Positions 6,239-54,289 are shown, counted from the stretch's first letter. The stretch: DNA of 64,000 bases from Ylistrum balloti (GCF_031769215.1 NW_026781914.1:248001-312000); one strand, 5' to 3'. Made by a program: numbers and translations. Notes: generated by a model not told the origin, from the sequence alone.

Positions 6239-6439
6239 TCACCTTTCAACACACGACTGTCTGCCGTCTCCATGATAACCGGGCATGCATACACAGGTAG
6301 GGACCCCGTCCAACAGACCACACATGCCATGAGTGTGACACTCAATATCTATCTCTGTCCGTCTGAAACGAGCCAGTCCATTGATATGTTTACATGTCAT
6401 CTTCTCACTGCAATCCTCCGTCACAAACGTACCGCCAAT
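6239..6439 (-). CDS. Terminal exon: TILa-like + EGF, stop
   Basis: IGGTFVTEDCSEKMTC...IECHTHGMCGLLDGVPTCVCMPGYHGDGRQSCVER-TGA. Confidence 0.88.
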   Translation of the reverse strand: MGGTFVTEDCSEKMTCKHINGLARFRRTEIDIECHTHGMCGLLDGVPTCVCMPGYHGDGRQSCVER

Positions 6440-9400: not shown

Positions 9401-12400
9401 GCGATGCTTATATCTCCAATACCAAAAGATTACGGTACAAACAGAGATTCCTTTGCCAGTGGATATACTATAGACCTTCCATGTAGAACATCATTGTCAG
9501 TGTTTATTGTTTGTAAGCAATATTAAGTAAGATTTACTTTTACATTCCACTTCACCGTCACCATAGTAACCACCCTTACAAACACACCGTCCGTCATCAC
9601 AGACAGCATTTTCAGCACATTTCCTTCCTCTACAGTATCCTTTAGCTTTAAATCAAGATGTATGAAAACGTCATAATCACAACACAAAATATTATATAAT
9701 GCCAACAAAATGAATATGTTTAATATTAATAAGATATTTATTTTAACCAACAAGTCTTATTCAACAACATTCTTTGTAACAGATCTTAATTCAGTTAAGC
9801 ATAATTCCAAGCGTTTCATCTACTTATGTTGATTTGTTACATACGATCACAGAAGTTGTAGCCGTCCCCATAGTAACCGTGTCTACAACCACACCGGAAG
9901 TTCTCACACGTTCCGTAATCCGCACACTTCCGACCTCCACACAAACCAAGGGCTGCAAACAAACCAAGAAAAAAAATGAAAAACAGCTTATATCAGAGAC
10001 AGAATGCACCGAGACAAACTAAAGAAACCATTTCTATTTGCATTTTTATCTTGTACACAACGTTGCCTACCTGACCTTTTTAACATCTTGACGTGGAAGG
10101 AATTTAGTTTTAAAAACGGAAATAATTTTATAACCATTTTCAGAATACACCTTCTGCATAATCATTTCTGACTGTAAGAAAGTAACTTTGAAATGCAGTT
10201 TTCATATAGAGAGAAACACTATACGTACGTTCACACTTTAAGTATCCATTGCCATGGTAACCTTGGTGACAGGTACAAGTTCCATTGGCACAATCAGCAT
10301 TTTCCACACATAAACGTCCGTTACAGAAGGCTGAAGTTCAAAAGATTTACGCACATGTATTTCAATATACATATACAAATGTCATTCGGAATGTTACATA
10401 TTTCCTGGCATCATCAATAGCATCACATGAATAGGAAAACGTATGATAATTTTGCATACGTCACAACTTTCACCTCTTATTTATGCTATATGCGTATATT
10501 AGCATATTGAACAATAGATACTTTCAGAATACTCACGATTACATTTTTTATATCCATTTCCAAAGTATCCCCTTTCACACAAACACATGTAGTTATTGCA
10601 GTAGGCATTGGGGGCACATGGTAGGCCGTTACAAATGCCTTCAGCTGCAAATCGATATATACATGGTTACCTAAATTCTTCAAGAAAAAAATATAAACTT
10701 GTACGTTTCACTCCGAAATCACTGTGTTGTGATTCATCACTTGAATTCCTATTTTAGAAATACCGACAAGTCAACATAATCTGAATTCCAACTCAAATTC
10801 GATGAAACTAAGGCAATGTATGAACAAAAGATTTATACGGAGATTCCTAAAAAAATTAAAAGGAGAATAGGACCAAATATCCGGAAAGAGTTAGCGTTTT
10901 CTGCTTCATCGACGTCACACGCCGTGTAAACCTAGGGCAATCCAAGTAAGAAATGCCACGTTCTGGAAAAAAAACCAAGGTAAAAATAACGGAACACACC
11001 AGCAAACTAACGAGCATAACACGTCTAATTATATATTAAACAAGGAAATACATTTGTTTGTGGCGTGAAAATGGACCATGCTTTCATCTCTTTATACATT
11101 TCTATAATGCTATGTACTCAAATTATACTGTCCTGTACAATAATTCTAAATGATGCTCAGTGAATTCACTACAAAATCCTCAACTGTTTGGTATTTATTT
11201 TTTTTGAAAGCTTACGTTCACATTTGAAAAATCCATTTCCATGGTAGCCCTCTTCGCAGAAACATGTGTCTTGTCTGCACTCTGCATGGTCTACACATTT
11301 GCGTCCGCCACAAAGTTCTGATGATTGAAACAAGAATTAAATTTAGCTATCAACGTAATTTTCTGGTAATGTTTTATTGAAATTATTTTTTCTAAAATGT
11401 AATTAACTAATTCAACAACTGAAGTCACGATTGACTGCTTTATCAAGGCTACTGAATCTCCTTACAATATACTGTAGTATATCGCGAACCGTTACTGAAA
11501 GTTAGTAATATAAAGATTGCTACTTAATGAAGACAGGAACAATATAAAGACTGATACTAAATGAAAACAGATCCGATTGAATTAACAGTGGCGGTTGATA
11601 TCTACTGTCACACATAGTAACTTCCTTCAACTATATTTACCTTCACAGCTAGTTACTTCCTTCATCAATATGTTGTATATCTACCGTCACACTTAGTTAC
11701 ATTCTGTTCTATATCTACAGTCACACTTAGTTACCTTCTGTTCTATATCTACAGTCACACTTAGTTACATTCTGTTCTATATCTACCGTCACACTTAGTT
11801 ACATTCTGTTCTATATCTACAGTCACACTTAGTTACATTCTGTTCTATATCTACAGTCACACTTAGTTACATTCTGTTCTATATCTACCGTCACACTTAG
11901 TTACATTCTGTTCTATATCTACCGTCACACTTAGTTACATTCTGTTCTATATCTACCGTCACACCTAGGTTACATTCTGTTCTATATCTACCGTCACACT
12001 TAGTTACATTCTGTTCTATATCTACAGTCACACTTAGTTACATTCTGTTCTATATCTACCGTCACACTTAGTTACATTCTGTTCTATATCTACCGTCACA
12101 CTTTGTTACATTCTGTTCTATATCTACCGTCACACTTAGTTACCTTCTGTTCTATATATACAGTCACACTTAGTTACCTTCTGTTCTATATCTACCGTCA
12201 CACTTAGTTACATTCTGTTCTATATCTACCGTCACACTTAGTTACATTCTGTTCTATATCTACCGTCACACTTAGTTACATTCTGTTCTATATCTACCGT
12301 CACACTTAGTTACCTTCTGTTCTATATCTACAGTCACACTTAGTTACACTCTGTTCTATATCTACCGTCACACTTAGTTACCTTCTGTTCTATATCTACA

Positions 12401-15400
12401 GTCACACTTAGTTACACTCTGTTCTATGTCTACCGTCACACTTAGTTACATTCTGTTCTATATATACCTTCACACTTAGTTACTTTCTGTTCTATATCTA
12501 CAGTCACACTTAGTTACCTTCTGTTCTATATCTACCGTCACACTTAGTTACATTCTGTTCTATATCTACCGTCACACTTAGTTACCTTCTGTTCTATATC
12601 TACAGTCACACTTAGTTACACTCTGTTCTATATCTACCGTCACACTTAGTTACCTTCTGTTCTATATCTACAGTCACACTTAGTTACACTCTGTTCTATG
12701 TCTACCGTCACACTTAGTTACATTCTGTTCTATATATACCTTCACACTTAGTTACATTCTGTTCTATATCTACAGTCACACTTAGTTACCTTCTGTTCTA
12801 TATATACAGTCACACTTAGTTACATTCTGTTCTATATCTACAGTCTGTTCTATATCTACCGTCACACTTAGTTACATTCTGTTCTATATCTACCGTCACA
12901 CTTAGTTACATTCTGTTCTATATCTACCGTCACACTTAGTTACATTCTGTTCTATATCTACCGTCACACTTAGTTACATTCTGTTCTATATCTACAGTCA
13001 CACTTAGTTACATTGTGTTCTATATCTACCGTCACACTTAGTTACATTCTGTTATATATCTACAGTCACACTTAGTTACATTCTGTTCTATATCTACCAT
13101 CACACTTAGTTACATTCTGTTCTATATCTACCGTCACTCTAACTTACGTGCCTCGCACCTTTATCTCTACCTTTACATTTAGTTACCCTCGGCTCTCCTC
13201 TGCTCTTTACCTACCTTCGCACTTCGTGGTCCCATCTCCGATATATCCTTGTTTACAACGACACACATAGTTAGAACATTCGGCATTGGCAGCACACTGT
13301 TTCCCGCCGCAATACTCCACAGCTGTTATGGTGACGTCAAAAATTAAAATAAAATATAAAAGAAGACAACTGGCAAACGTAATATATATATTTGAATCAG
13401 AATTGCCACTATTGAAAAAAAAACTCTCTTTTGAAAATGAAATCAAAATAAAAAAAAAACACAGTATAAACAATTATACTAGATAATAATGATTCAGGAA
13501 GACATTAATGTGTTTATAGAGTCATTATTAGATAATTACTATATAAATAATCTCTGGTTAAATTATGATTGTAATATCCAGTGTGTTTACTCTAGGATCC
13601 TGTCATGTCGAAGTTTCTTTACTTCAATATTTACATAATTTTATCACTTTATTCACATTCCTTATTTCATCGTTTTAAAGAAACTTATCTACACGATTTG
13701 TCTGACAACGTACATTCACATTTCTGGTAACCATTTCCATGGTAACCTTCCTTACACATGCAACTCCCTTGGGAACAGTATGCAAACGAAGTGCATTTTC
13801 TGCCTTTGCAAAGAGCTGAAATATAAGTAAAAGACTATTTTCTTTACTTTTGTCGTAATTCAATCACATACATTCATCATGAACTAGCACATCGTCTGAA
13901 CACTTTTATCTAAGAAAATAAACAGATCTCTATATACATCTCCTTTCAAGGCGTCCATAAAATTATTGCATAATCAAAATAACACTTTGTACATACGTTC
14001 ACAGAAAGTTCGGCCGTTTCCGACGAACCCTTCCTTACAAACGCACTGGAAGTTGGTGCATTCTGAATTTGCCACACATCTCTGACCCCCGCATATACCA
14101 TTAACTGAAAACAGAAATATGTCGAAGTTGCTTTACGCTTTTAATTGAAATCCGTTTTTTCTTTATACAGATATTTTTAACGTCTTTAACATTCGATCTT
14201 ATTTCTCTTCTTCATATTATGCTAGATTTATTATTGTTGTAAGTCATGTAAGATCTATAAACAAATACGTTAACACACCTTCACAACGGATATATCCATC
14301 ACCATGGTATCCGGAAATGCACGTGCATTTGCCGTCGTGACATTCAGCGTTGTCAGTACATATCTGTCCACCACATATTTCTGTACAAGTGAAGATGGAT
14401 TATAATTTCGCTTTATATGAAAAAGGCTCATACTTGTATTCGTATGGTACCTATAGAATTAAAGGTTTTATCATTCTTATAGCAGGTGATGTTAGTTTGT
14501 CTTATCATCACCATGATAACGACGCATTAAAACGGTATTAAGTTCAGACATTGAAAAAATATATTTTTTACTTAATTTGAATAGATGTGAAAATGTAAAG
14601 GAGTATGCTAAATGTGTGTAAATGAAACCTTACCGTCACACTCATCGTACCCGTCACCCCGATAACCCGTCATACAAACGCACTGGAAGTTAACACAATG
14701 CGCAAATGCCGCGCACGTTTTTCCGTCACAAAATCCGTCCACTACAATAATAAAAATTCATTTTAAAGATAAAGTTTGCTTGGTGCTTATATGCATATTG
14801 TTCTTGTTCTTTAAGAAGATTTTGAAGTGATATAAATATTTCGATACAGTTGAACTTTTATCGGGAATGATATTCTATAATACCTTCACATCTAGTATTG
14901 CCGTCTCCGTGATAGCCCTTGTCACACACACATTTGTCGTCGATGCAGGATGCAAACTCCACACACTTGATTGTCCCACAAAGGGCTAAAACAATAGAAC
15001 ATATTACCTGATTTACAAATTGCTATCACAAAACAATACTATTTCTGGTATGCGAAAAGTAAAGCGATTTGAAAATGTGTTGTTGTTATCAAGCCATAAA
15101 AATCGGATAATTACCTTTACATTTCTTGATACCGTCCCCAACATATCCTTGTTGACACTGACATTGGAAGTTCACACACTCCGCGTTCACAGAACATTCC
15201 TTACCACCACACACAGTAGTCGCTAAAATATATATCATACCATACTAAAAATATGTGATATGTTTAGGTGCGTATTTCAACAAACATATAAGTATCTTGC
15301 TAAATCTGTTTACTCGTCAGCAAAGAAAACGTATGTGGTCCTCAAAACAACTCTAACTGTGCGTTAAAACAACAAAGCGTGTGTTTGCTTAGATAGCAAA

Positions 15401-18400
15401 GCCACACTTACGGTATGTTTAGATAGCAAAGCCACACTTACAGTATGTTTAGATAGCAAAGCCACACGTACAGTATGTTTAGATAGCAAAGCAACACTTA
15501 CAGTATGTTTAGATAGCAAAGCCACACTTACGGTATGTTTAGATAGCAAAGCCACACTTACATTATGTTTAGATAGCAAAGCCACACTTACATTATGTTT
15601 AGATAGCAAAGCCACACTTACATTATGTTTAGATAGCAAAGCAACACTTACGGTATGTTTAGATAGCAAAGCCACACTTACAGTATGTTTAGATAGCAAA
15701 GCCACACTTACATTATGTTTAGATAGCAAAGCAACACTTACGGTATGTTTAGATAGCAAAGCCACACTTACATTATGTTTAGATAGCAAAGCAACACTTA
15801 CAGTATGTTTAGATAGCAAAGCAACACATAATAAACCTAACAGGGTTAACAATGTTAATAACATTCAATAAAATATCATAAATAAACAATTAAACACGTA
15901 AAAGCTAATAAGATAAACACAATAAAACAAGTTAAATCAACTATTACTCATGTCACAAACCTAAAATTCTGAACACTTACGTTCACACAATACGTGTCCG
16001 TTTCCGTGAAATCCTTCGGCACACTGACACTTGTTGTCCACACAAATGGAGTTAGCAACACATAGCCGGTCGTTACAGAGCTCTGTAACGTATCGACAAT
16101 AACACACACGAGTGCAATAATTTACGAACTAAACAGTAAACACACTATTGAAGGTATACATAAAGTTTTTTTTATGAAAGCAAATCGATTTCACCGTAAA
16201 TTTGCCAACAAATGTAAACTAAATGGTAGCTGAAGAGAGAGAACCGATTCTAATTTAACATTAATTTTAACAAGATTAAATATCTTTTCCATAATTTCCA
16301 TGAACAAAATTTAAATATTATAAATAGAGTATTAATTTGTTTAAGGTTTTACAGGTGTGCCTTTTTGATACGCTGTAACACATACCTGTACATTTTGTAT
16401 TGCCATCTCCACTGTACCCAGGCCGACACTTACACCTGTAGTTCTGGCACTCAGCGTATTCAGCACATCGATCTCCATTACAGAACCCATTAGCTGATGT
16501 CCGAAAAGTTATACATTCAGATGTTTCCATGACAGATTCATGCTTCAAGGCATATGTTTATGTTTTTGTCACTTGATACCAATTGACCATAAATTGTAAG
16601 ACCTCAGTTTAATTGGTTATCAGTGTGCACCACTGGCACCAGAACACGTACCCAAACAATGTGATATTTCCAATCTGTAAAGTAGCTCACGAGACAATAC
16701 ATGTATGTCAACAGTTGGAAAAGTACCTGTTTGCTACCTCGTCCTTAACAATTAATTAATTTTCAAATTGTAGTCCTTTATGCAGAATTCGTTGAATCTG
16801 GCAGTAGAAAATTTTCATATGACCATTCCTGTGATTATGGCACTATTCAATGGTCATATGGGCATTCCCTTGTCTCGAGCAGTACACAATTTCATACATT
16901 ACAATAACCTGTAGGTGCCTTTTAAATCATACTGATCTTAAATGAACACTACAATAGATACATTTGATGTAGACAAGAACTTACGTTCACATTTGATGTA
17001 TCCGTCTCCATGGTAACCTTGTGTGCATTTACAACCACTTTCTGTACACTCTGCGTGGTCGACGCATGGTATACCCTTACAGATGCCTGAAATACGAAAA
17101 GTGAAAACAAAACCGCCAATAACATCTATACAGCTAACCACTAAGTCACTTACGACTTAAACCTTTACTTACGGTTTTCCTGTCATGATAGATATAGGGC
17201 ATGTCCAGTAGGTGTACTGTGATCTACATATTTTCAACCTACAATTTACATTTCCAGCCATCTCAAGACCAGCAGGTTAATGACAACAATCCCTCAAATT
17301 ATTTGTAGATATATTATTTCGTTATGTAAATGATGAGACAATAACATTGAACATTCGGTAATATCAGATTAAATATTATGTTTTGAAAATATTAAAACAA
17401 AAGTGGTCTTACGTAAACAGCGAGTGTAACCGTCCCCGTAGTAATCAGGGTCACACAAACAGTGGTAGTTCTTACAGGATGCATTCTCTGTACAAGTCTT
17501 CCCACCACAACTTCCTGATTCTTATAGAAAAAAAGGCAATTAAATGTCAATCTACATTTACGTCATTGAAAAATAAAGATAAAATGTTACAACAGTTGTC
17601 TCATATATACCTTCAATGTGTATGTAGGCGTCGCCACTGTACCCTGGGTCTCATACATACCTTCAGATTGTATGTAGGCGTCGCCACTGTACCCTGAGTA
17701 TCATACATACTTCACATTGTATGTAGGCGTCGCCACTGTACCCTGGGTCTCATACATACCTTCACATTGTATGTAGGCGTCGCCACTGTATCCCGTGTCA
17801 CATTCACACTTTCCGTCTATACAAGAAGAGTGATCTACACACGAGCGTCCATCACACAATCCTGTGAGAGACATCAAATATATTTCCGGAATTAAAATAG
17901 TACACACTTACCTACACATTGTGTGAACCGATACAAACCGTCACAAAAACCTATATATTTATATAAACAACCAGTCTTATACATCACTTATTTTTGTTAC
18001 AAGATGTGTTTAAGAAACTGACGTCATAAATCAAACACCAACACGACTGACTCAAATATGAAATATATCTATATAGGCTTACAGACTAACTTCACAAAGT
18101 ACATGGTGTATTGTACATCATCCTTCGATGTGTGTTTATTTTCCCATTAACAGTGTATAACAATATGTATTTGCTTACGTTTACATTTATTGTAACCATT
18201 TCCATGAAATCCTTTTTTACATTTACACACATAATTGATGCACTCTGCAAACTCTGTGCAGATTTTCCTTCCGCATAAGTATGGCGCTGTAATATAAATC
18301 AAATTTAAATATAAGAACAGGCACCTTTATGTGTTTCTAAATGCACAGAGAAGAAATACATTTAGTACACACATGACAGCTGAAACGTGATTATTGTTTA

Positions 18401-21400
18401 ACTCTTAATGCTGATCTCCCAGAGTTACCGCCCTTTGTTTCAATCTTTCAGTACAGCGGTAAGTTTAACAGAAGAGAATGAAGTAACGTTGGTATACATT
18501 ACTTCTGTGTGATGACAGTTGGTGACAAGTACTAGGAACATGGATCAAAAGTAAAAGTGTGTTTTACTGAGCCAATTCTATTTTTTTCTGAAGCATGCGT
18601 ACTGTACAAATTAATACATTTATAACAAATGGTTGAAACTTAGAATTTACTTACGTTCACACAAGATCAAACCGTTTCCTTGGTAACCAAAACTGCACAC
18701 ACATTTGTTATCCTTACACACAGCATAATTCGCACAAGTTTGTCCACCACATAGAGCTGTATAAAAAATGGTAGATATTGAGTACCAAATGTAATACATT
18801 GAATCTTTCACTACGAAAAATCAAAGTTCTCGGATCTATTTTGTTTCGCAATTGATTCGATATTCAATGACGTGTTCTCAAAACCAATATGCAACTGACA
18901 GACAACCTAACAAGACACGATTTCGAAATATGCAAGTTGATGGAAACGATGTTTTATGGGGGAAAATATGGTCGTTATAATAATCCCATTGGATAATATT
19001 CCATTTCTTCATAATATATGTAGTTGGAAGTGTTTGATGTTTGTTGGTTTGCCTGTTGGTTCCGTTGTTGTATATATTGTTCTCATTTAAGGCACGTGAC
19101 ATTAATGACTTTGAACCAAAATTTACATGGCAAGTGTAGTTGACGAAGCAGAAGATACTTACCTGTCCGCAACACTTGTCTTATTCATCTTGTATTTTTT
19201 CAGGAGACTTCGATTAAATATTTCCTTTGTTCATATTTCCCCCTAGTTTTATTGAATTACAGTTTGAATTATGCTACAAGATGACACGTTGGTATTTTCT
19301 TTGCTGTTGTTCAATCTACGTCTCTAGAATATTTCATAGTGAAACTTCTTTATTATCTTCCAATGTAAAAGTTCTGTTCACATTTATTATATTTCAAAGT
19401 CGGTGAACCATACATTTATTTTATTTCGAAGTCGATGTACCATAAATGTTTCAGTATAAAACTTCACATTTATTTTAATTCAAAGTCTGTTTACCATACA
19501 TGTTTCAGTGAAAACTTCACATTTAATTTAATTCGAAGTCTGTTTACCATACATGTTTCAGTGTAAACTTCACATTTAATTTAATTCAAAGTCTGTTTAC
19601 CATACATGTTTCAGTATAAAACTTCACATTTAATTTAATTCGAAGTCTGTTTACCATACATGTTTCAGTGTAAACTTCACATTTAATTTAATTCAAAGTC
19701 TGTTTACCATACATGTTTCAGTGAAAACTTCACATTTAATTTAATTCAAAGTCGATGTAACATACATGTTTCAGTGTAAACTTCACATTTAATTTAATTC
19801 GAAGTCAGTGTACCATACATGTTTCAGTATAAAACTTCACATTTATTTTAATTCGAAGTCGGTGTACCAAACATGTTTCAGTATAAAACTTCACATTTAA
19901 TTTAATTCAAAGTCTGTGTACCATACATGTTTCAGTATAAAACTTCACATTTATTTTAATTCGAAGTCGGTGTACCAAACATGTTTCAGTATAAAACTTC
20001 ACATTTAATTTAATTCAAAGTCGGTGTATCATACATGTTTCAGTATAAAACTTCACATTTATTTTATTTCAAAGTCTGTTTACCATACATGTTTCAGTGT
20101 AAACTTCACATTTAATTTAATTCAAAGTCGGTGTAACATACATGTTTCAGTGTAAAACTTACGTTCACACTTGTTGTAGGGATCTCCGATATAGCCATGG
20201 TTACATTTACATTCGTAGTTGATACATTTAGCAAATGAGGCACATGTTCTTCCGTCACAAACACTGGCAGCTGTAAGTATGTAAGGTATCATTAGAATCA
20301 CAATAATCTGATAGAGGAATTTCTCTTCATATAGAAATGGTTTATGTCATTTCCAAATGTGTTCAAATGTTAATTGCTACGGTAATATCCTATATACAAA
20401 GTTGTGGCAGCTTCAATTACATGCTTCACGCAATGATTTAGCCAGGAAATTAAACGTTAAGTGGTGAAATGTCCGTGCTTACGTTCACATCTGATGTAGG
20501 GATTACCCTGGTACCCGTTCTGACAGACACACTCATTAGCATCACAGTAAGCGTATTCTGCACAGCGTCGGAAATCACACACAGCTAGATAACAGGAAGG
20601 ACGATGTAAAATGATTAATGTCAAACCAACAGATACAAATTACATTACATGGTAAGTGGGACTGAATAAATAACGTACTTTATGTTTGGAGGGTTGTAGT
20701 TTACGATATTACAAATTACTCAAATCAAAATAGAGAACGTCATCTTTGTATTCGTGATAATGAAAACACATTCAGATGTCATCAGTATGGTGATTTGAGT
20801 CACCATTGATGTGATAAATGAAGCAAATTAAATTACGTAAATATAGTAATACACAGCAGATCCCAGAGGGATCTCGGCTCCCACAATTCTTTGATCTTTA
20901 TTTGTTCTTTGAAAGTTGGATCTCTTCCCTTCATTTCTCTTCTCTTTTGTGTATTTACTCTTCATGAAGAAATCTGAACATTTCTTTGCAGAAATAGTGA
21001 TCATAATTTTTTAAATGCCAAATGAAATATGGTCGTCTGGAAGCCATTTTGTTTCCCCTAATTAGTCCTTAAACCAATCGGGCACAATTAGGGACCAAGG
21101 GGAACTTACGTATGAAGTTTGAGAAAGATCCATTCAGTACTTCTTAAGAAATAGCGATAACAATTTTTTCTAGTCGAAATCCAAGATAGCTGCTTTCGAC
21201 CATTCTATTTTTCCTGAGCAGGCCCAAAGTCAAACGGGAAGAACGAGGGACCAAGGGAAAGCTACAGATGAGAAAGATTCACCCAGAACTTTTCAATGAA
21301 TAACCATAACAATCTTCATTGAAAATAATCCAAGATGGTCACCTGTCTGCTATTTTTTGCATCAGTCCAAAAATTGAACGGACACAACTAGAGTCCATGG

Positions 21401-24400: not shown

Positions 24401-27400
24401 AGATATAGTAGATGTGTCATTCATACAGAAAACATTTAGATATAGTAGATGTGTCATTCATACAGAAAACATATAGATATAGTAGATGTGTCATTCATAC
24501 AGAAAACATACAGATATAGTAGATGTGTCATTCATACAGAAAACATATATACAGATATAGTAGATGTGTCATTCATACAGAAATATATACAGATATAGTA
24601 GATGTGTCATTCATACAGAAATATATACAGATATAGTAGATGTGTCATTCATACAGAAAACATATATACAGATATAGTAGATGTGTCATTCATACAGAAA
24701 ATATATACAGATATAGTAGATGTGTCATTCATACAGAAAATATATTCAGATATAGTAGATGTGTCATTCATACAGAAAATATATACAGATATAGTAGATG
24801 TGTCATTCATACAGAAATATATACAGATATAGTAGATGTGTCATTCATACAGAAAACATATATACAGATATAGTAGATGTGTCATTCATACAGAAAATAT
24901 ATACAGATATAGTAGATGTGTCATTCATACAGAAAATATATACAGATATAGTAGATGTGTCATTCATACAGAAAATATATACAGATATAGTAGATGTGTC
25001 ATTCATACAAAATAATCTCCACTTGCACCTAACTCCAATTTACTATACAAGGAGATATGCTTACATTTACAGGAGACATATCCATCTCCAACATACCCAG
25101 GTGAACACACACATTTCCCGTATAGACAAGTGGCATGCTCACAACAATGGCGACCATCGCAGAAGTCCAGGGCTACGTAGTGTCAGGAAAAAAAACAGTT
25201 ATCATCATCACTGTTAGGGACGTTATCATCAAAGAGTAAGGTTTGGTTAACAACGATTTAACTAACCTATTCATCATCATATAGCTGTTGTCAATTTTAA
25301 CGTTTATAGAATGTGTCTTTGAGCAGTCAAAACCTCCTAATTGTTGTCAGTCGACTTACAGTAACATTGCAGGTATCCGTTGCCATGGAAACCTTCCATA
25401 CACCTGCATTTTCCATCTTTACATGTTGCAAACTTTGCACATCTTCTGTTACTGCATAGTTCTTCGGGAAACAATATATTTTGATTACTTAAGTGACATA
25501 TACAACAAAGTAGAATGTTCTGTTCAATAAGGAATAACCTAAAACAAAGTTATTACAGAGAACACATATTTCTTGAATGCATAGAAAGTAAAAATTTCTG
25601 TGTATTCCACCATTCACATAAAACATAAATAGTAGAGCCAATAAAGCGTCTATTTTATTGAAGAAATGTATAACAGTTGGACTCTTTCAATAAAAATGTG
25701 AATACTAAAAATACGACAAAGCGGTGAATTTTGTAGAATGATATATACTCACAATCAATGACGTAATCAATTATGTCATATTATCAAATAAATGATCGAA
25801 TGATGAAGTAGAAAAAGACAGAGGGTTATTACAAAACCCTCATGACCATTAGTATAATCTAAGTACCTTCACAATGGCTGTACCCGTCTCCTACAAAGCC
25901 GTCTCTACACACACACTGATAGTTGAGACACTTGGCGTCAGGGGAACACATCTTCCCTCCACATAGTGACGTTGCTATATACAAGATTTATCGTTGGAAA
26001 AATAACAATCTTTATAAAAATGCACCAGATCATTAGCCAACAGAACATAATCTCTTTAACAAGAATAACATGGGTGACATTCAATGTTTATTGAGCTGCT
26101 TTTAAAATTTTGAGAAATACTTTACCTTCACATTTCAGATATCCGTTACCATGGTAACCTTCTGTACACACACACTCCTCTCTGTAGCAATACGCGTTCT
26201 GTACACATTGTCTCCCTTTACACAGAGCTACAACGTCAAAGCGTGATGGCCGGTATTTAAATTGACATATTTAATTAGTGATAATTTTAAAATACACCAA
26301 GCAACTATTTTGATTACTATAAACGATTTTCTTTCTTTTATTTGATGTACAGACAATAGGAAACATAATTCGTACACTAACAGTTTGTATTCGATGGTTA
26401 CAGATATACAAGTAAAAAAAACCATGATGAACGTGATAATAAACAGTGAATAATTCACCAAACGCCGTCAATAAATTAAATTCAATTAAGAATTCATAAT
26501 TAATTAAAGTTAAAACTTCACAATACCTAAATTATTTCAAAGTTCTTATTATCTGTTCATGTATTACCTGTGTCTTATAAACAACTTAATTTATCCTAGT
26601 TAAATAACGAACTTGTTTACATCTCTGTACTTCATGGGTACGTAAAAGAAATATTTATTGATTTGAATGCATGTCCTTACGTGTGCATTGCATGTAGGGG
26701 TCTCCATAGAATCCGCGAGTACATGTACACTGGTAGTTCACACATACCGCGTTCGCGCCACACTTACGTCCATCACAAACTCGTAATGCTACAACCGAAG
26801 ATAATCAAAAACATCAACATTAAATCAAGTAAAGAGAAAATCCATAATATCTAGACAGACTTGGACCATCAAACAGATGATTTGATAATATCAGAATTAC
26901 TGCAGTGATGAGTGTCAACGAATCCTATATACCAATCATAAATCAATTATTGTGAAGTTTTCAAATCATTGATAATATCGATAATTACAATGTACAGTAT
27001 CTGAGAACGTATTTATCTATATGTATCTGAGAACGTATTTATCTATATCAATATGTATCTGAGAACGTATTTATCTATATTTATATGTATCTGAGAACGT
27101 ATTTATCTATATGTATCTGAGAACTGAGAACGTATTTATCTATATGTATTTATCTATATCAATATGTATCTGAGAACGTATTTATCTATATGTATCTGAG
27201 AACGTATTTATCTATATGTATCTGAGAACGTATTTATCTATATGTATCTGAGAACGTATTTATCTATATGTATCTGAGAACGTATATTATCTATATGTAT
27301 TTATCTATATGTATCTGAGAACGTATTTATCAATGTGTATCTGAGAACGTATTTATCTATATGTATCTGAGAACGTATTTATCTATATGTATCTGAGAAC

Positions 27401-30400
27401 GTATTTATCTATATGTATCTGAGAACGTATTTATCTATATGTATCTGAGAACGTATTTATCAATATGTATCTGAGAACGTATTTATCTATATGTATCTGA
27501 GAACGTATTTATCTATATGTATCTGAGAACGTATTTATCTATATGTATCTGAGAACGTATTTATCAATATGTATCTGAGAACGTATTTATCTATATCAAT
27601 ATGTATCTGAGAACGTATATGTATCTGAGAACGTATTTATCTATATCAATATGTATCTGAGAACGTATTTATCTATATCAATATGTATCTGAGAACGTAT
27701 TTATCAATGTGTATATGTATCTGAGAACGTATTTATCGTATTTATCTATATCAATATGTATCTGAGAACGTATTTATCTATATCAATATGTATCTGAGAA
27801 CGTATTTATCTATATCAATATGTATCTGAGAACGTATTTATCTATATCAATATGTATCTGAGAACGTATTTATATATGTATCTGAGAACGTATTTATCTA
27901 TATCAATATGTATCTGAGAACGTATTTATCTATATGTATCTGAGAACGTTTTTATCTATATCAATATGTATCTGAGAACGTATTTATCTATATGTATCTG
28001 AGAACGTATTTATCTATATCAATATGTACCTGAGAACGTATTTATCTATATCAATGTGTACCTGAGAACGTATTTATCTATATCAATATGTATCTGAGAA
28101 CGTATTTATCTATATGTATCGGAGAACGTATTTATCTATATCAATATGTATCTGAGAACGTATTTATCTTATTTATCTATATCAATGTGTATCTGAGAAC
28201 GTATTTATCTATATGTATCTGAGAACGTATTTATCTATATCAATATGTATCTGAGAACGTATTTATCTATATCAATATGTATCTGAGAACGTATTTATCT
28301 ATACGTATATTATCTGAGAACGTATTTATCTATATCAATGTGTATCTGAGAACGTATTTATCTATATCAATGTGTATCTGAGAACGTATTTATCTATATG
28401 TATCTGAGAACGTTTTTATCTATATCAATATGTATCTGAGAACGTATTTATCTATATCAATGTGTATCTGAGAACGTATTTATCTATATCAATGTGTATC
28501 TGAGTATGTAACCAGTATCAATATTATTTTGGTGTCCTTAGTTGTCAATATATACCCAGAGGCCACAAATTGATCTTTTCAACATATCATGTTTGTAATG
28601 TCATCATTTCCTCAGCAATTTACATTGTATATTCGAAAAAATTACATTATTTAAGAATACATACATGTGTTTCTTTTGTGATTTATTAGGAATCTGATAA
28701 CTTAAACCCAAGTATGCAGTCCAACTCACGTTCGCATTTGACGTCACCGTCTCCATGGAAACCGTCATCACATCTACACTCGCCGTCGATACAAGAAGCT
28801 CTTTGTGCACATCTCCTTCCATTACACAGGGCTGTTTGGAAAGAAGCCTTAAATGGTTAACAAATGTAGATAAAATAAATCAAATAACAGTTCACATCAT
28901 ATATAGTGAATATTTGAAATGAAATCAACAAAAAAAATACCGACATGTCAAAACAGCTCAAACTCAAAATCAATGAAACTAAGGGAAATATGAAGCAAAG
29001 AGCGATTAACGCGGAGACCTATGAAAATGTACAAGGAGAATAAGACAATGTGTTCAGGAAGGTAAGCGTCTTCTGCTTCATTGACGTCTCTTGCCATGTG
29101 TAATGTTCTCAGAAATGTTAACAACATCGAACATACCTACTAATTGACATATTGATGGTTTATATCATTACAAATGTAATGCCAGTGTCCAACCTTATTC
29201 CTTCCAAAATCAATGACATCAAGATCAGCCGTTTACCTCTCTTTCAACTTTTAAGGCATAATCGTTATAATCGTGATGATTTCAGTATTCGTTTTTTTTA
29301 GCTAAGTAACACCCTTACCTCCCGGACCTGTCACTGTTTATTGGAGTCTACGACTTGTTTTCAGTATGACAATTTGACGCTGTCAACTACCGACGGTTTT
29401 GAGAGATGTATTTTGATGAAATAGTGGCTGATGTTGGTGTATATATGAAGAGGAAGGGACACTTTTCCTTCTGAAACACTACTTCTTTGCTCTTGAAACT
29501 TTAAAGGGGCTCCGTGTGAACGTTTCCTATGTTCATATTTACCTTTTTTATCAATATTAAGTATAAGGTAAGCTTTGTTAACATTTCGTTATCGTTGTTT
29601 TAAATAGATTTGTTGGAATCTTTCATATTTTATAATTACTGGCATTTTGTATGTCTTCTCTACATCAGTCTAAATTTCTTCTCCTTACGTTCTCAGCGAA
29701 ATGGGAAGTCCTTATGTTGTCTCAATAATACATCATGTTTAGATTATAAATAAATACTTACCTTTACACACTACATACGGATCTCCATGGTATCCAGCAC
29801 CACACCTACAGATGGAGTTAACGCAAGTGGCACCCTTTGCACATATAGCATCATCGCACTTACCATCAGCTGATTAAAATCAATGGAAGACATTACGTTT
29901 CATGTAAACATGTGTTTATGGGTGCAAATATAGGTTTTAATATCCTCTATAGTTAATCAGTATCACTTCAACCCCTTACCGTTTTAAACTGATTTATTTT
30001 TTTACTATTAATATTTTGTACGTACATCGGAAAGTGAATTTCACGTAAAATATATATTTACCATGCTGAAAATGCACTTCGATGCACGTGAAGAAAATAA
30101 ACAATCCTTATATTTACATTTGATTACCGTAGATATTCATACAACATTTAAGAAACAAATCACTTCATACATATTATTAGAACAGAGGCAAGTTCAATTG
30201 AACTGCCATATTATACCAATGAGGAAGGTGGCGCCATATGGGGGTTCAATGAAAATGCCATGACAACAAAAAGTGATTCAATTGATGTTTTTATTTACTA
30301 TTAGTAAATACTTAAACGATGTAATTATATCAATATATTTTACTTAACATTTAACCACGTTTATGTAAATTTTCTATTTACAACCACTATTGACATGGAC

Positions 30401-33400
30401 AAGACCACGACACACGCATTGTGACTTTAAAACATCGTCAAGAGACTTGCTCCGGCAGTGTAAATTTATTAGAATACGATAAGTAGTAAAACCATTATTA
30501 AATAGAACAAAGACGGTTAATTTAACGGAATTGCTCTTACGTTCACACTTTATATATCCGTTTCCATGGAATCCCGGAAGACAGACACATCTGTCATCCT
30601 GACAGGATGCGTTGGAACAGCATCGCATGCCGTCACAAAGAGCTGGAAAATATAACACAACGTTCTTATCTCAAATATCCGACCATATAACCACAACCAT
30701 ATTCTCACTCTGTGTGACAATAATCTACTTTATCAGTAACACAAAGAAAGCATTTCTCAGAAAACATTTTCTCAGATTTGCAATATCTAAATGCACAACA
30801 CCATGGTATTACAATGCATTTTGTTTCAGATAAATCATAAACATAAAACAAACAAAAAATTAATGCATGCTTTAATAAAGAGCAGAAAAACGTAAGGCAA
30901 AAAGAGTTAACACAAGTGTTTAATTACCAGGAAGTTTTGAAAGGTGTTTCATTGGTTGCAGAGAAACACAAGCCCTGGTACACACTTGCGATGTATATAT
31001 AGACTGTATTTAATGTCTAACCTTTCGGGTGACTGAGATCCTACATAAGCTGTCGGTGTAACCAGGCATTTGATATGTTGTAGGGAACATCTCCTTTCAG
31101 GGTATTATGGTGCTACATCACATCTAACCTTTGGAGTATTTTGATACCACATCACATTTGTTGTAGGGAGCACCTTACCTTTGGAGTACCTTGGTACCAC
31201 ATCACATTTGTTGTAGGGAGCACCTAACCATTGGAGTATCTTAGTACCACATCACATTTGTTGTAGGGAGCACCTAACCTTTGGAGTACCTTGGTACCAC
31301 ATCACATTTGTTGTAGGGAGCACCTAACCATTGGAGTACCTTAGTACCACATCACATTTGCTGTAGGGAGCACCTAACCTTTGGAGTATCTTGGTACCAC
31401 ATCACATTTGTTGTAGGGGACGCCCACCCTTTTGTAGTATCTTGGCACCACATCACATTTGGTGCAAGGGACGCCCACCCTTTTGTAGTATCTTGGTACC
31501 ACATCACATTTGTTGTAGGGGACGCCCACCCTTTTGTAGTATCTTGGCACCTCATCACATTTGTTGTAGGGGACACCTACCCTTTTGGAGTACCTTGGTA
31601 CCACATCACATTTGTTGTATGAGACACCTACCTTTTGGAGTACCTTGGTACCACATCACATTTGTTGTAGGAGACACATACTATTTGGAGTACCTTGGTA
31701 CCACATCACATTTGCGGTAGGCAGCACCTAACCTTTGGAGTACCTTGGTACCACATCACATTTCAAGGTACCACATCACATTTGCGGTAGGGAGCACCTA
31801 ACCTTTGGAGTACCTTGGTACCACATCACATTTGCGGTAGGGAGCACCTAACCTTTGGAGTACCTTGGTACCACATCACATTTGTTGTAAGGGAAACCTA
31901 CCCTTTTGGAGTACCTTGGTACCACATTACATTTGTTGAAGGGGACGCCTACCTTTTGGAGTATCATGTCGCTATACACTACTGGGTTGATGTTAACATC
32001 TTTTTTTTTAAATCTTTTTGTCACTTCATATGTTTCAGGATTTTGTCTGCAGTAACTTGACACAACGTACGTTGTCGAAAACATCTATATTTAAGCAAAT
32101 CAATTTATTATGTAGAATCCACTTTTGCTTTAGAGGTCAATTCAGTTGTAGGAAATATCGTCCTTTTCGAAGCTTTCGTTTATAGGAAGAGTGTGACATT
32201 TCATATAACTCAGATATTATATTGGCGCTACTGAATGACCAGTTGTAGTGTATACAAAACCTTGTACAGCTGGAAATTGTCGGAAACTGCAACCAATGTA
32301 ACCAGGTGTAACAATGTAACACACAGAGATAATTCCTTCTACACTTTCTGAACACAAAATGTATACCCTTATGATTTACCATCACGGCTTACTAACGATC
32401 CTAAATTTGAAACTTACCAATACAGGCGTGGTACCCATCACCATAGTAACCACGCTGACATACACACTTGTAGTTAACACACTCAGCATCCGCGACACAG
32501 GTCCGGCCATCACACACAGCAGCGGCTACAAAAACAATAAAAGCAAACACACATGTGTAGTTAGCACAAGCATAAACACTCAGGTGCGACTTTCACACAC
32601 CGTGACGATTACAAAAACAATAGTGTACAATACACCACACCGTTCTGACCTTCACACACCATGACGGTTACAAAAAATGGTGAATACACACTACACAGGT
32701 GCGACATTCACACACAATGACGGTTACAAAAAACTGGTGAATACAAACTACACAGGTGCGACATTCACACACCGAGACGGTTACAAAAAAAGGGTGAATA
32801 CACACTACACAGGTGCGACCTTTCACACCGTGACGCTAAATATAACGATAGTAATTATTGCATCCTCCCATCCTTCTAGTTAACGAAAAACCCACAACTC
32901 ATAGGTCTGGCCACCATAGAGCGCCGGCTGCTGCAAAGACGATAATGTTTTTTCCTGAATCTAACTACATGGTGAATCTCAAGTACCTTGCACTAAAGGG
33001 CAGAGTCGGCATCATATTTTATAAATACATCATTGTTAAATCATGAAATCAACAACAAAAACATCCCCATCTAATAAACTCATAATTCAAACAAAAATTG
33101 GTTATTTAAAGAAAATAACGACCGAAACATCGACTTGAGTTCCGTAACTATGGCAAAATATTATACGGCTGTGTTTGTGGGTTTTTCTTTATTATAACCA
33201 TATTAAAGATTAGTGGTTCCGATGTACCATAGAATGCAAACTTACGTTCACAATGAATGTAGCCGTTACCATGGTAACCAGGTATACATCTACAGTTATC
33301 GTCTACACATTGGGCATTGTCAGCACACCTCCGTCTATTACACAGACCTGTTGAGCATGTTGAAGAGAGTGGTCAATACTATAATATAGATAATGTAAGT

Positions 33401-36400
33401 ATACAAAACTAAGTAGTGGTCAAGCATATATCTGATTGACCAGAATACTAACAGGAGTACTGGGATTCCATCAAAACTCCGACGATGTGTTACAATTTAC
33501 ACTGGTGACCATTCGGCGATGATGAAAATACTGTATTCGGGTATTGTTCAGCTGGCCTAGGTGACTGAATGTACCATAAAACACGTGACGCTGATGAAGA
33601 CATTTAGATGACAGAATGTGACATGTAACCACGTGACGCTGACGAAGACATTATGATGACAGAACGGGACATATGACCACGTGACGCTGACGAAGACATT
33701 TGAGTGACAGAACGGGACATATGACCACGTGATTCTGATGAGGACATTTGGGTGAAAGAACGGGACATATGACCACGTGATAATGATGAGGACATTTTGG
33801 TGACAGAATATGTCATATAATAATTAAGTGAACGTTGATGAACACATTGATGAACGTGTCACATAATCATGTGACGCTTAGATACCAGATTGTGCAATAC
33901 AGTATTTGGTGTTTATGAATTAGGTATATGACATGGATATTGAACCCTACTTTTACACTCGTCGTATCCATCCCCGACATAGCCCTGCCGACACACACAG
34001 TTGTAGTTGATGCAATCAGCGTTTTCAGAGCAACTCTCACCTCCACATGTCCCGATTGCTGAAAGTTAAAAGAAATTATAAAGTTTAAAAATGGTAAATT
34101 AATGTGTTTTTATTAACAATTGTTTCCCTTATCAGAAACCTTGGCACGGCATTAAGTAATAATAACGAATTTTATTTGATTGATGTCACACAATGTTTTC
34201 TTCAGAATATTCATCAGCTGGTGACAATACACACAAAGCATGTTTCATAACAAGTCTTATTACTACAGATTCCTTTTATCGTAAACTAGATACAATACAT
34301 TCTAAAATTGCATAAAATTTAGACAACAAAAATGTCAGTGCGCTTTAATTTAGGGACTCGTTTCATTGTGCTTTGTGACGTCACAATGGTTGAGTAATAT
34401 CGTTTTAAAGAGAAATAAAAATATATGATGATCGTATCTCATTACCTATAGCCTGCCGACTGGCTATAAAAATTACGAGGTTGTGACTCATGGAAAAATG
34501 AATTTATCATTTCTACACTCCCCTAATTTAGGAAACTCTCAGATTAATTTTCCTCGGCGTGCGTCATGAAATCATGTTTGTTTGCTCATGAAATGTGACG
34601 ATTTCACGCTAAAATTCTATACTAATCCCATCATACAATGCGAGGTATATATATTTATCATTGTAGCACAGAACTCGGTCAGGCTTTCTGTATGATAGGA
34701 AATTAATACTTGTTTTATCAGAAGTTCCTTTATCTAAATAAAATCAGTTCAGAAAATTTGATAAAATGCTCGAAATCTATTAAAGGTTTCGTGATCCGTT
34801 CCTATCGTATATTAAAAAGTTGTCTTTATAAACAATTAATAGTTTTCGATACTTATCAATGTCGAACAATTAGGTAAAATAAATACCCAGGAATGTTAAA
34901 CCTAGCAGTGCGGTTTGTATCCTTTCTATGACCGGGAGATGCGATGCTACATAGAAAGTAGTCAGGAAAACTTAACAAGACCTGTAGGAACCGTTGTTTT
35001 CTACTGCTGGTATTTATCGATTTACACAGACACACAACAAAACCATATATTATCCTTTGTGTTCCCTTACAGAAATTTGTCATAAACAAAATGTTTCTTT
35101 TGCTATACAACACGGTATTTCTTGTAATCATAACAATTTGCGCAAGTACATACGTTCACAGTTGACGTAAGGATTTCCATGGTAACCGTTTCCACAGCGA
35201 CAACGCATATCCAGGCAACGAGCGTGCAGACCACATTTTGTTCCGTTACATAAGGCTGTAAATAGAGGTTATTCACTTTTCCTTTAAATGATGGTCGCAA
35301 AAAAGACAGTACAAAACGGTGAATGTATTCAGTTGATCATTTAAATACTACATTTAGACATTTCTGGTTAATACGACCCACTTACGTTCACAAGAAGTTA
35401 TGCCGTCTCCAAAGTATCCGTCCAAACAGGCGCAATTAGGACGTCCTGACTGCAGCCCGCACGCGGCGTACTCGTGACATTGTAATGTGACAGTTTTCTT
35501 TTGCAGGGTTGGTTTCCCATTCGTTTCAACACATGTTAGCATCGTCTGACAGTCCAACGACAGCGACGATTTCCAAAGCTAGGATTACAAATAAAAATGT
35601 TGCTAACTTTACCGGAATGTGATGGTACTTTCCTCGAATGCGGTTTATCATAGAGAACTGACCGTTAGGTTTACAAGCACGAAGAACGCTTAATGTTATA
35701 GTAATTGTTTAACTTACAACGTTACTACTGATTACTATCATATCACCAGGCCAATGAATACATACTGCTGAGTACAAGTTACTAGTGCAACTAGCATTAG
35801 TGTACTAATTAAATGATAACATTAAAAAAAACTAAGGTATGATGCAAGATAAATATATATATTACTGATACGTTAACATATCTGTCATCCGCCCTTAGAT
35901 CAACAGGTTTATGATGTTGTACTGGTGAATGTCGGTAGATGTGGTTTGTGGTTATCTAATAAAAAAATCCGAACAATCACATGTCTCGTACAAAACATCC
36001 TTCACACAATATAATATACATTTCACTGATATCAGTAATTTAAAATTCCATTCCATTTGGTTTTAAATGATAAATAGATAAAATTTCAATTCCCCTTTGA
36101 CAAAGGAAGTAATCTAATACTGGTGGATCCAGGGTTTAGTGATCAAGTTGATATGGTGAACATACAACAAAAACAAAAACAAAACAAAACAAACAAAGAA
36201 GTTAACAAGGAGTTCTCTGTTCTCTAAATTAGTTATTTACAAAAATAAATAAAGTATCTATGAATGTAACATCATCAAGTGATGTTTGCAGTCTCTGATT
36301 GGCTAAATCGATTCCACGTGATTCACAATACATACTTTTTGTCAACAAAATGGATGAAAAATGATGAACCGATCATCACACTTCGTATAAAATATCACAG

Positions 36401-54110: not shown

Positions 54111-54289
54111 AAGACAATATCAGCCTACGTTGGGAAAATAATTTCAGCATTCATCGCTAAGACAATATCGACTTGCATTGCTAAGACAATTTCAGCTTAA
54201 CTTGAACATTGATCAGACAATCTCAATCACCATAGATAGGAAAATGTCAGCCTACATAATTACGATTATAATATTGGAAATACATAGCG

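What the first reader, a model, noticed from the sequence alone, without database searches (positions are those of the whole stretch)
9538..35255. Strict A/B alternation of two EGF module types, with an A-specific His and a B-specific Asn-aromatic loop
Seen: exon lengths run 102,108,102,108 for 18 unbroken pairs. All modules share C-x4-C-x5-C-x4-C-x-C-x11-C spacing, and inter-module linkers alternate between 3 and 5 residues. In the G[YF]xG motif, x is His in 15 of 18 A modules and 2 of 18 B modules. B modules have Asn at loop position 2 in 16 of 18 and Tyr/Phe at position 3 in 16 of 18, while A modules mostly have xD[GDN]x. The modules are otherwise highly diverged, so the pattern was maintained rather than recently copied. 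Inference: the structural unit is an AB pair, and a His every second module could form a periodic metal-binding or pH-sensing track; the many Tyr are possible DOPA or cross-link sites.
Basis: partly seen in the sequence, partly recalled or inferred. Interest (0 to 1): 0.72.

Follow-up and report, generated by a model that had tools for sequence, protein, structure and literature searches.

The report
Frozen alternating EGF rod in bivalves
A secreted bivalve matrix-type protein has a central rod of 37 small EGF modules in which two module types alternate strictly, and the module number, order and type-specific residues are the same in pearl oyster and scallop relatives, so the pattern is old and selected; what the conserved histidine does is untested.

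Summary
On the minus strand, 37 one-module exons (35255 down to 9538) all have AG/GT sites and phase 1-1. Their lengths run 102/108 for 18 pairs, then a terminal 108-nt module. Spliced, they give 1295 residues without a stop. The A-module His (15/18 against 2/18) and the B-loop Asn-Tyr/Phe (16/18 each) are as reported.

The array sits between two VWD-C8-TIL-EGF_3 cassettes of a secreted protein that databases call "hypothetical", "Tenascin-X" or "zonadhesin-like".

The new result comes from rescanning the genomic DNA of two Pinctada imbricata paralogues. Each also holds exactly 18 AB pairs plus a terminal module, collinear with the window module by module (permutation p < 5e-5). His is 18/18 against 0/18 in one and 16/18 against 3/18 in the other. 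A partial Mizuhopecten protein agrees.

The array is therefore an ancient, frozen, two-type repeat under class-specific purifying selection, not a recent copy. The AB pair as the unit is supported.

The metal or pH track is possible but untested. The DOPA idea has no support, because most of the Tyr sit at motif positions also used by non-alternating flatworm EGF_3 arrays. No RNA data were available.

The scan's notes hold no earlier report of this pattern.

The parts
52172..52537 (-). open frame with a DUF3011-like Cys-rich domain and a likely signal-peptide tail; N-terminal part of the gene
   Evidence: Pfam PF11218 E 4e-9. Pinctada P0153 has the same domain in front of EGF-VWD.
44381..44542 (-). 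single EGF exon in front of VWD-1 (open-frame limits, not exact exon ends)
   Evidence: counterpart in L002 at 19557
43331..43699 (-). VWD-1, N-terminal part (open frame)
   Evidence: Pfam VWD E 3e-11
40234..40632 (-). VWD-1, C-terminal part (open frame)
   Evidence: Pfam VWD E 2e-13
38673..39071 (-). C8-1 (open frame)
   Evidence: Pfam C8 E 8e-13
38269..38544 (-). TIL-1 (open frame)
   Evidence: Pfam TIL E 3e-10
35357..35578 (-). EGF_3-type module that closes cassette 1 (open frame)
   Evidence: Pfam EGF_3 28.5 bits, at the cut-off
35154..35255 (-). module 1, type A, 102 nt
33951..34058 (-). module 2, type B, 108 nt
33246..33347 (-). module 3, A, 102 nt
32418..32525 (-). module 4, B, 108 nt
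30541..30642 (-). module 5, A, 102 nt; extra Cys after C2
29762..29869 (-). module 6, B, 108 nt (loop VNSI, His at x)
28730..28831 (-). module 7, A, 102 nt
26681..26788 (-). module 8, B, 108 nt
26126..26227 (-). module 9, A, 102 nt
25867..25974 (-). module 10, B, 108 nt
25360..25461 (-). module 11, A, 102 nt
25065..25172 (-). module 12, B, 108 nt; extra Cys after C2, loop LYGK
23112..23213 (-). module 13, A, 102 nt
22771..22878 (-). module 14, B, 108 nt
21818..21919 (-). module 15, A, 102 nt
21555..21662 (-). module 16, B, 108 nt
20483..20584 (-). module 17, A, 102 nt (Gln in place of His)
20163..20270 (-). module 18, B, 108 nt
18655..18756 (-). module 19, A, 102 nt (Gln in place of His)
18179..18286 (-). 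module 20, B, 108 nt (His at x)
17760..17861 (-). module 21, A, 102 nt (Ser in place of His); its 3' end and donor are repeated in the following intron
17413..17520 (-). module 22, B, 108 nt
16985..17086 (-). module 23, A, 102 nt
16386..16493 (-). module 24, B, 108 nt
15981..16082 (-). module 25, A, 102 nt
15115..15222 (-). module 26, B, 108 nt
14884..14985 (-). module 27, A, 102 nt
14634..14741 (-). module 28, B, 108 nt
14279..14380 (-). module 29, A, 102 nt
13997..14104 (-). module 30, B, 108 nt
13714..13815 (-). module 31, A, 102 nt
13215..13322 (-). module 32, B, 108 nt
11216..11317 (-). module 33, A, 102 nt
10537..10644 (-). module 34, B, 108 nt
10229..10330 (-). module 35, A, 102 nt
9845..9952 (-). 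module 36, B, 108 nt
9538..9645 (-). module 37, terminal type: 108 nt, 5-residue linker, A-like loop, no His
   Evidence: same type ends the arrays of L001, L002 and P0156
8187..9151 (-). VWD-2 (two open frames, 8819-9151 and 8187-8666)
   Evidence: Pfam VWD E 3e-10 and 2e-14
7708..8205 (-). C8-2 (open frame)
   Evidence: Pfam C8 E 4e-7
7242..7526 (-). TIL-2 (open frame)
   Evidence: Pfam TIL E 3e-10
6242..6541 (-). TILa/EGF_3-type last module, followed directly by a stop codon; likely C-terminus
   Evidence: Pfam EGF_3 24.9 bits, below the 28.5 cut-off; stop after ...SCVER; P0001 and P0153 end at or soon after the same module

Best explanation
The region encodes the central rod of a secreted bivalve protein. 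The deduced order is DUF3011-like domain, EGF, [VWD-C8-TIL-EGF_3], 18 A-B EGF pairs, one terminal EGF, [VWD-C8-TIL-EGF_3], stop.

Shown here. Each module is one symmetric phase-1 exon. A exons are 102 nt and B exons 108 nt. The two types differ at a small fixed set of positions:
- A has a 3-residue linker ending in Leu, an x-[DN]-[GDN]-x hairpin tip, His after G[YF], a hydrophobic residue at column 29 and Glu after C6.
- B has a 5-residue linker usually starting with Pro, an x-N-[YF]-x tip, a hydrophobic or aromatic residue where A has His, and a polar residue at column 29.
- Both complete relatives have the same 37 modules in the same order, and the partial Mizuhopecten protein keeps the order over modules 24-37. 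The type-specific residues are kept in all of them although every other non-Cys position has drifted.

Inferred. A two-exon AB unit was amplified once, before these bivalve lineages and paralogues split, and the array was then frozen. Purifying selection keeps each module in its class because the two alternating junctions (A to B, B to A) are different, complementary packing interfaces. The mechanical repeat is therefore a di-EGF of about 70 residues, and the whole is a stiff rod of fixed length. At the usual 2.5-3 nm per EGF that is roughly 100 nm. The rod holds two D-assembly-type heads, known from mucins and VWF as polymerising or cross-linking units, a set distance apart in an extracellular polymer.

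The A-specific His is a selected feature placed every about 70 residues along the rod. Whether it titrates or binds metal is open.
For: Exon structure, open frame and motif counts. Flanking domains above the Pfam cut-offs. No transmembrane or further domain after the last EGF_3, which is followed by a stop.

Profile search of 1.84 billion proteins: the best hit, P0001 (Pinctada imbricata), has the same architecture. Rescanning the genomic loci L001 and L002 gives 37 modules each, meaning 18 AB pairs plus a terminal module. L001 splices without a stop; in L002 one exon, module 25, has a frame problem. His is 18/18 against 0/18 in L001 and 16/18 against 3/18 in L002. In the B loops Asn is 16/18 and 17/18, and Tyr/Phe is 18/18 in both.

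Module-by-module collinearity: the mean score at offset 0 is 114-119, against 100-109 at offsets of +/-2 to 6. The positional partner ranks first of 18 in 13, 10 and 6 of 36 modules for the three pairs. Permutation p < 5e-5 for all three pairs. Mizuhopecten P0156 covers modules 24-37 with strict alternation and His 6/6 against 0/7, with p 0.001-0.006.

AlphaFold2 of ABAB and ABABAB segments of P0156: mean pLDDT 93.6 and 90.0. Every module has the EGF pair of hairpins, and both linker types are at pLDDT 87 or more. Foldseek matches tandem EGF rods such as NELL2 and Notch with probability 1.0.

A second individual (run X1) has fewer differences in exons than in introns, and 5 of the 8 listed exonic differences are synonymous.
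Against: - No RNA run holds this locus. Transcription, exon usage and tissue are therefore unknown, and the symmetric exons could be skipped.
- A search for covariation between neighbouring modules found nothing above the null, though power was low.
- The A/B tree signal rests on the class-defining codons alone. Common descent of each class is therefore parsimonious, not proven.
- Single modules score below the Pfam EGF_3 cut-off.
- Rod length and the role of the VWD heads are by analogy with other proteins.
- The species of the window was not established by me.
Confidence: 0.7

Rival explanations
1. One reading: the His in every second module forms a periodic metal-binding or pH-sensing stripe that drives lateral assembly, and the many Tyr are DOPA or cross-link sites, as in mussel adhesive proteins.
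For: The His is strongly conserved by class and by position: 55/60 A against 5/61 B over four arrays. Flatworm EGF_3 arrays mostly have Glu or other polar residues at that position, which suggests a surface site. In MUC2 and VWF D assemblies, histidines take part in pH-dependent assembly (PMC7599080, read). Scallop byssus does use EGF-like arrays (PMC9168380 and PMC6244088).
Against: There is only one conserved His per about 70 residues, and no second conserved His, Asp or Cys ligand column in A. A site would therefore need several chains. Net charge does not alternate between A and B. Tyr/Phe at column 23 is the canonical G[YF]xG[DN]G position, also present in the flatworm arrays. The byssal EGF proteins described so far have Calx-beta domains and a PCGGPC motif and are a different family. 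No expression or proteomic data exist for this gene.
Confidence: 0.15
2. Historical relic: the alternation only records that a two-exon unit was duplicated. The class differences have no function of their own.
For: Tandem duplication of an AB unit explains the alternation by itself. The tree signal for A and B lies only in a few codons.
Against: Other non-Cys positions have drifted to about 40% identity between positional partners, while the class-defining residues stay at 16-18 of 18 in each array of lineages that split long ago. Module number is unchanged in three independent complete copies, which neutral arrays of symmetric exons rarely manage.
Confidence: 0.08
3. Cassette array for isoform diversity: because all 37 exons are phase 1-1, the gene makes rods of variable length by exon skipping, and the alternation is kept so that skipping pairs preserves junctions.
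For: All exons are symmetric. The Pinctada gene models P0001 and P0153 lack many of the exons present in their loci.
Against: The same models also create AA and BB junctions and cut modules, which looks like annotation error in a repetitive gene. No transcript data could be examined. Conservation of every module at its own position argues that each module is used.
Confidence: 0.1
4. Calcium-binding EGF rod, stiffened by Ca2+ between modules as in fibrillin or Notch.
For: The B loop x-N-[YF]-x-C-x-C resembles a shortened form of the Asn ... Tyr/Phe part of the cbEGF consensus. This is my own comparison from general knowledge.
Against: Neither linker has the D/N-x-D/N-E/Q motif before C1. Pfam EGF_CA scores 15 bits against a cut-off of 27.
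Confidence: 0.03

Closest known systems
Pinctada imbricata FSP39_012964 (P0001) and FSP39_015875 (P0153); Mizuhopecten yessoensis 'Tenascin-X' (P0156)
   Same: Same family. VWD-C8-TIL-EGF_3 cassettes flank an A/B EGF array, with the same 3/5 linkers, His in A and N-[YF] in B. The genomic loci hold 37 modules collinear with the window.
   Different: The deposited models are partial or skip exons (21, 13 and 14 modules), and none is characterised or correctly named. Identity to the window is only 40-58%. Some Pinctada A exons are 105 nt.
EGF_3 (PF12947) arrays of flatworm NIDO/Ig proteins annotated 'stabilin-1' or 'tenascin' (e.g. P0173, P0193)
   Same: Same Cys spacing and G[YF]xG[DN]G motif, about 35% identity over the array, and 18-22 modules in a row.
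   Different: One module type only, a uniform linker of about 7 residues, an x-[DN]-G-x loop throughout, mostly Glu where A has His, and no VWD cassettes.
Oyster and mussel 'zonadhesin(-like)' proteins (P0166 Magallana gigas, P0160 Mytilus californianus)
   Same: VWD-C8-TIL cassettes with EGF arrays between or beside them.
   Different: Their arrays are of a single, different repeat type (33- or 39-residue units) with other numbers, and there is no A/B alternation.
Mucin / von Willebrand factor / zonadhesin / IgGFc-binding protein D assemblies
   Same: VWD-C8-TIL-E order of the two cassettes. These assemblies polymerise by disulfides, with pH-sensitive His contacts in MUC2 (PMC7599080).
   Different: No MAM, mucin (PTS), CK or transmembrane parts were found here. 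Only two cassettes are present, separated by a long EGF rod. Polymerisation was not tested.
Scallop byssal EC proteins (Sbp9) and mussel Mfp-2
   Same: Long tandem EGF-like arrays in secreted bivalve structural proteins (PMC6244088, PMC9168380).
   Different: EC proteins carry Calx-beta domains and a PCGGPC motif, and vary from 1 to 49 modules between paralogues. They have no VWD and no two-type alternation. No evidence places the present gene in the byssus.

Membership tests
EGF-like domain, EGF_3 type (PF12947) | six Cys with C-x4-C-x5-C-x4-C-x-C-x11-C spacing and G[YF]xG[DN]G before C6 | tested here: met
   37/37 modules
EGF-like domain, EGF_3 type (PF12947) | score above the Pfam gathering cut-off | tested here: inconclusive
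   One B module tested alone scores 22.7 bits against 28.5; the A module tested gave no EGF_3 hit. The cassette EGF_3 at 35357-35578 reaches 28.5. PF12947 is precomputed on P0001, P0153 and P0156.
EGF-like domain, EGF_3 type (PF12947) | EGF fold (two beta-hairpins per module) | tested here: met
   AlphaFold2 pLDDT 93.6 and 90.0, four strands per module; Foldseek to NELL2, Notch and uromodulin EGF rods with probability 0.9-1.0
Calcium-binding EGF (PF07645) | D/N-x-D/N-E/Q before C1, and a score above the cut-off | tested here: not met
   Linkers are x-x-L and E-P-x-x-x; EGF_CA 15 bits against 27
VWF-type D assembly (VWD-C8-TIL-E) | VWD, C8 and TIL in this order, each above the Pfam cut-off | tested here: met
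   Two cassettes
VWF-type D assembly (VWD-C8-TIL-E) | disulfide-linked multimerisation | not testable with these tools
   needs protein biochemistry
Zonadhesin | MAM domains, mucin region, several D assemblies, transmembrane tail, sperm expression | tested here: not met
   No MAM (PF00629) on the window pieces or on P0001, P0153 or P0156. A stop follows the last EGF_3 directly. Expression is not testable.
Tenascin-X | EGF array followed by fibronectin type III repeats and a fibrinogen globe | tested here: not met
   No FN3 or fibrinogen domain on P0156 or P0153. The array is followed by VWD-C8-TIL.
Scallop byssal EC / Sbp9 family | Calx-beta domains inside the EGFL array; PCGGPC motif at C1-C2 | tested here: not met
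   No Calx-beta on the pieces scanned. The C1-C2 loop is x-G-x-x. Family definition taken from PMC6244088.

The most novel reading that the evidence does not exclude
The frozen (AB)18 rod is a molecular ruler. Its exact length, and a stripe of one conserved His per di-EGF repeat, let neighbouring rods register side by side. They would switch from packed to extended, or cross-link through a shared metal ion, when pH rises on secretion. That would be a new assembly principle for a bivalve extracellular fibre or gel, built from EGF modules rather than collagen or His-rich tails.
Probability: 0.1. Interest if true: 0.8.

Novelty: new variant of a known kind. Interest (0 to 1): 0.52.

Why it matters
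Tandem arrays of symmetric EGF exons usually change copy number freely. Scallop byssal EC proteins range from 1 to 49 modules between paralogues.

Here a two-type array has kept exactly 37 modules, in order and in class, in two paralogues of one bivalve lineage and in the window's gene. This is a clean natural case for asking three questions: why an extracellular rod needs a fixed length, why it needs a di-EGF rather than a mono-EGF repeat, and what a single conserved surface-type His per repeat does.

It also shows that current gene models of this family are wrong. They skip up to two thirds of the exons, and the names attached to them ("Tenascin-X", "zonadhesin-like") are misleading.

Tried and rejected
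- **RNA evidence.** No RNA run holds the locus. The one holder (X1) is DNA, contiguous through introns and about 2% different from the window.
- **Tree of the 37 modules.** A and B labels cluster, but not after the class-defining codons are dropped. There are too few columns to resolve clades.
- **Intron comparison.** There is no residual similarity that would date the duplications.
- **Covariation between neighbouring modules.** I tested 3 arrays with position-preserving permutations. Nothing exceeded the null.
- **Charge alternation between A and B.** None is conserved across the arrays.
- **Super-repeats.** Identity is 0.51 at offset 2, 0.48 at offset 4, and 0.49 for the same-class mean.
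- **PDB sequence search.** Only a spurious RNase match.
- **Foldseek.** Generic tandem-EGF hits with low TM-scores, as expected for long rods.
- **Identity with the scallop byssal Sbp9/EC or 'TNL' genes.** Rejected on motif and domain content.
- **Further family members.** Two more word searches found only P0001, P0153 and P0156.
- **AA or BB control models.** I did not run AlphaFold on these. No clean alignment exists for non-native junctions, and the tool returns no coordinates or PAE.

Full report
**1. The observation**

A six-frame scan for the Cys pattern found 35 strict modules between 9542 and 35250, all on the minus strand. A looser scan added two that carry an extra Cys, at 30545 and 25063.

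For each module, exactly one combination of AG acceptor and GT donor gives a phase 1-1 exon of 102 or 108 nt. Joined in order, the 37 exons give 3888 nt and 1295 residues without a stop. Exon lengths run 102,108 for 18 pairs, then a last exon of 108 nt.

- His in G[YF]xG: 15/18 A against 2/18 B.
- B loop Asn: 16/18.
- B loop Tyr/Phe: 16/18 (Fisher p 3e-5 to 4e-8).

The A loop is less regular than stated. Asp is 10/18, and G/D/N at the next position is 15/18.

Further class-specific columns exist:
- Arg-Arg against Lys-Thr after C1.
- Asn against Asp in G[ND]G.
- Ile/Val/Leu against a polar residue at column 29.
- Glu after C6 in 17/18 A modules.
- Leu before C1 of A, and Pro at the start of most B exons.

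Module 37 is neither A nor B. It has the long linker, an A-like loop and no His.

Core identity is 49% within a class and 44% between classes, with six Cys and two Gly included. The introns (129-1941 nt) share nothing but one dispersed repeat.

**2. The gene**

Pfam places VWD, C8 and TIL upstream of the array (43699-38269) and again downstream (9151-7242). Each cassette is closed by an EGF_3-type module (35357-35578 and 6242-6541). The second of these is followed directly by a stop.

Further upstream lie a lone EGF exon (44381-44542) and a DUF3011-like domain (52172-52537). The Pinctada protein P0153 has the same order from DUF3011-like to the last EGF_3. The first-stage note on a lectin-like domain fused to this scaffold is therefore consistent.

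No transmembrane segment or other domain follows, so the product is most likely secreted.

**3. Relatives**

A profile of the 37 modules was searched against 1.84 billion representative proteins. It put a Pinctada imbricata hypothetical protein (P0001) first. Word searches added a second Pinctada protein on the same scaffold (P0153) and a partial Mizuhopecten yessoensis protein called "Tenascin-X" (P0156). No other member of the alternating family turned up.

The deposited models show AA and BB junctions, but these are annotation gaps. Scanning the genomic loci L001 and L002 with the same procedure gives 37 modules in each: 18 alternating pairs plus a terminal long-linker module. A exons are 102 or 105 nt and B exons 108 nt (one of 105 in each locus). 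One L002 exon, module 25, has an acceptor or frame problem.

| Array | His in A | His in B | B-loop Asn | B-loop Tyr/Phe |
|---|---|---|---|---|
| L001 | 18/18 | 0/18 | 16/18 | 18/18 |
| L002 | 16/18 | 3/18 | 17/18 | 18/18 |
| P0156 (modules 24-37) | 6/6 | 0/7 | not counted | not counted |

P0156 alternates strictly over the modules it covers.

**4. Age and stasis**

Module i of the window is more like module i of L002 or L001 than like other modules of its class.

- The mean alignment score is 114-119 at offset 0, against 100-109 at offsets of +/-2 to 6.
- The positional partner ranks first of 18 in 13 (window vs L002) and 10 (window vs L001) of 36 modules.
- None of 20,000 permutations of pair order reaches the observed sum.

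The same holds between the two Pinctada paralogues and for P0156 against all three arrays (p 0.001-0.006).

The 37-module array therefore existed before these genes and lineages separated, and it has neither gained nor lost a module since. There is no sign of concerted evolution. Where the window lacks the His (modules 17, 19, 21), both Pinctada partners have it, so these are local losses.

Other agents' notes call this genome a scallop. I did not verify that. The 57-59% identity to the Mizuhopecten array leaves open whether P0156 is the orthologue or a paralogue.

**5. A and B clades**

On a maximum-likelihood tree of the 96-nt cores the labels need 5-6 changes, against 12.6 expected (0 of 500 shuffles). 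A tree with A held together is not worse (AU p 0.54).

Dropping the three main class codons weakens the clustering. Dropping eight removes it. The rest of each module is saturated.

The independent marker of descent is the linker and exon-length difference, which never breaks in the three complete arrays or the partial one.

**6. Structure**

AlphaFold2 on natural ABAB and ABABAB segments of P0156, with shallow alignments of family segments, gives mean pLDDT 93.6 and 90.0 and pTM 0.58 and 0.47. Every module has four short strands, and no linker falls below about 87.

Foldseek finds tandem EGF rods: NELL2, Notch, uromodulin and integrin beta.

By DSSP, the His lies in the first strand of the C-terminal hairpin. 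From the usual geometry of a two-residue-register hairpin, it shares a face with column 29, which is hydrophobic in A and polar in B. In B the pattern is reversed: hydrophobic at 24 and polar at 29.

I read this as two different packing surfaces at the two junction types. By analogy with cbEGF pairs, where the C-terminal hairpin of one module meets the main hairpin of the next, A's Tyr-His would face B's Asn-Tyr tip. This is inference.

**7. Function**

The shown facts are the architecture and the selection. The inferred role is a rod of fixed length that spaces two D-assembly-type heads in an extracellular polymer. In MUC2 and VWF, such assemblies build disulfide-linked polymers, with histidines at pH-sensitive contacts (PMC7599080).

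The His stripe may serve a pH or metal switch, but three points weigh against a simple site:
- There is one His per 70 residues.
- No partner ligand column exists.
- No charge alternation is conserved.

The DOPA idea lacks support. Most of the Tyr are at motif or class-conserved positions. Column 23 is shared with non-alternating flatworm arrays. The described scallop byssal EGF proteins are a different family.

Calcium-binding EGF is excluded by sequence.

Expression could not be examined. A second individual's DNA shows fewer exonic than intronic differences, and the exonic ones are mostly synonymous.

**8. Verdict**

The reading "maintained AB unit" is supported. The chemistry proposed for His and Tyr is not tested.

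This is a new variant of a known kind: an EGF rod in a VWD-type secreted protein. It is notable for strict two-type periodicity and exact conservation of module number.

Noticed in passing
window 17598-17790 (intron after EGF exon 21, minus strand): A 50-bp minisatellite whose unit is the last ~33 nt of the exon plus the GTATGT donor and 13 nt of intron. There are three extra copies, two with an intact GT. The period is not a multiple of 3, so use of a downstream copy would shift the frame. This is the same kind of donor-copying array as first-stage note s1-262973 describes at 37785-38290.
   Followed up: partly
window 11671-13137, 15389-15827, 19412-20160, 23466-25009, 27014-28504, 31124-31963: Most of the long introns of the array are long because of minisatellites (units of 26-54 bp, 13-50 copies each). 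The origin of the units was not examined.
   Followed up: no
window 30541-30642 and 25065-25172: Modules 5 and 12 have a seventh Cys directly after C2 (CC), giving two potentially unpaired thiols about 7 modules apart. The positional partners in Pinctada lack them. Mizuhopecten P0156 has one in another module.
   Followed up: partly
L001 and L002 (Pinctada imbricata GCA_033119305.1, scaffold VSWD01000006.1): The deposited gene models FSP39_012964 and FSP39_015875 include only about 21 and 13 of the 37 EGF exons present in the DNA. L002 module 25 (about 36281-36382) has an acceptor or frame problem, which may be an assembly error or a decaying exon.
   Followed up: partly
window 524-3487, plus strand: Open frames that look like exons of an aldo-keto reductase gene lie downstream of the VWD-EGF gene on the opposite strand (read by eye; no domain search run).
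   Followed up: no
window 53674-54197 (plus) and 57100-58100 (both strands): Long open frames made of short coding-like tandem repeats (SGKT..IGKTIIAY units; a Pro/Ser/Leu-rich repeat). They are probably minisatellites and not genes.
   Followed up: no
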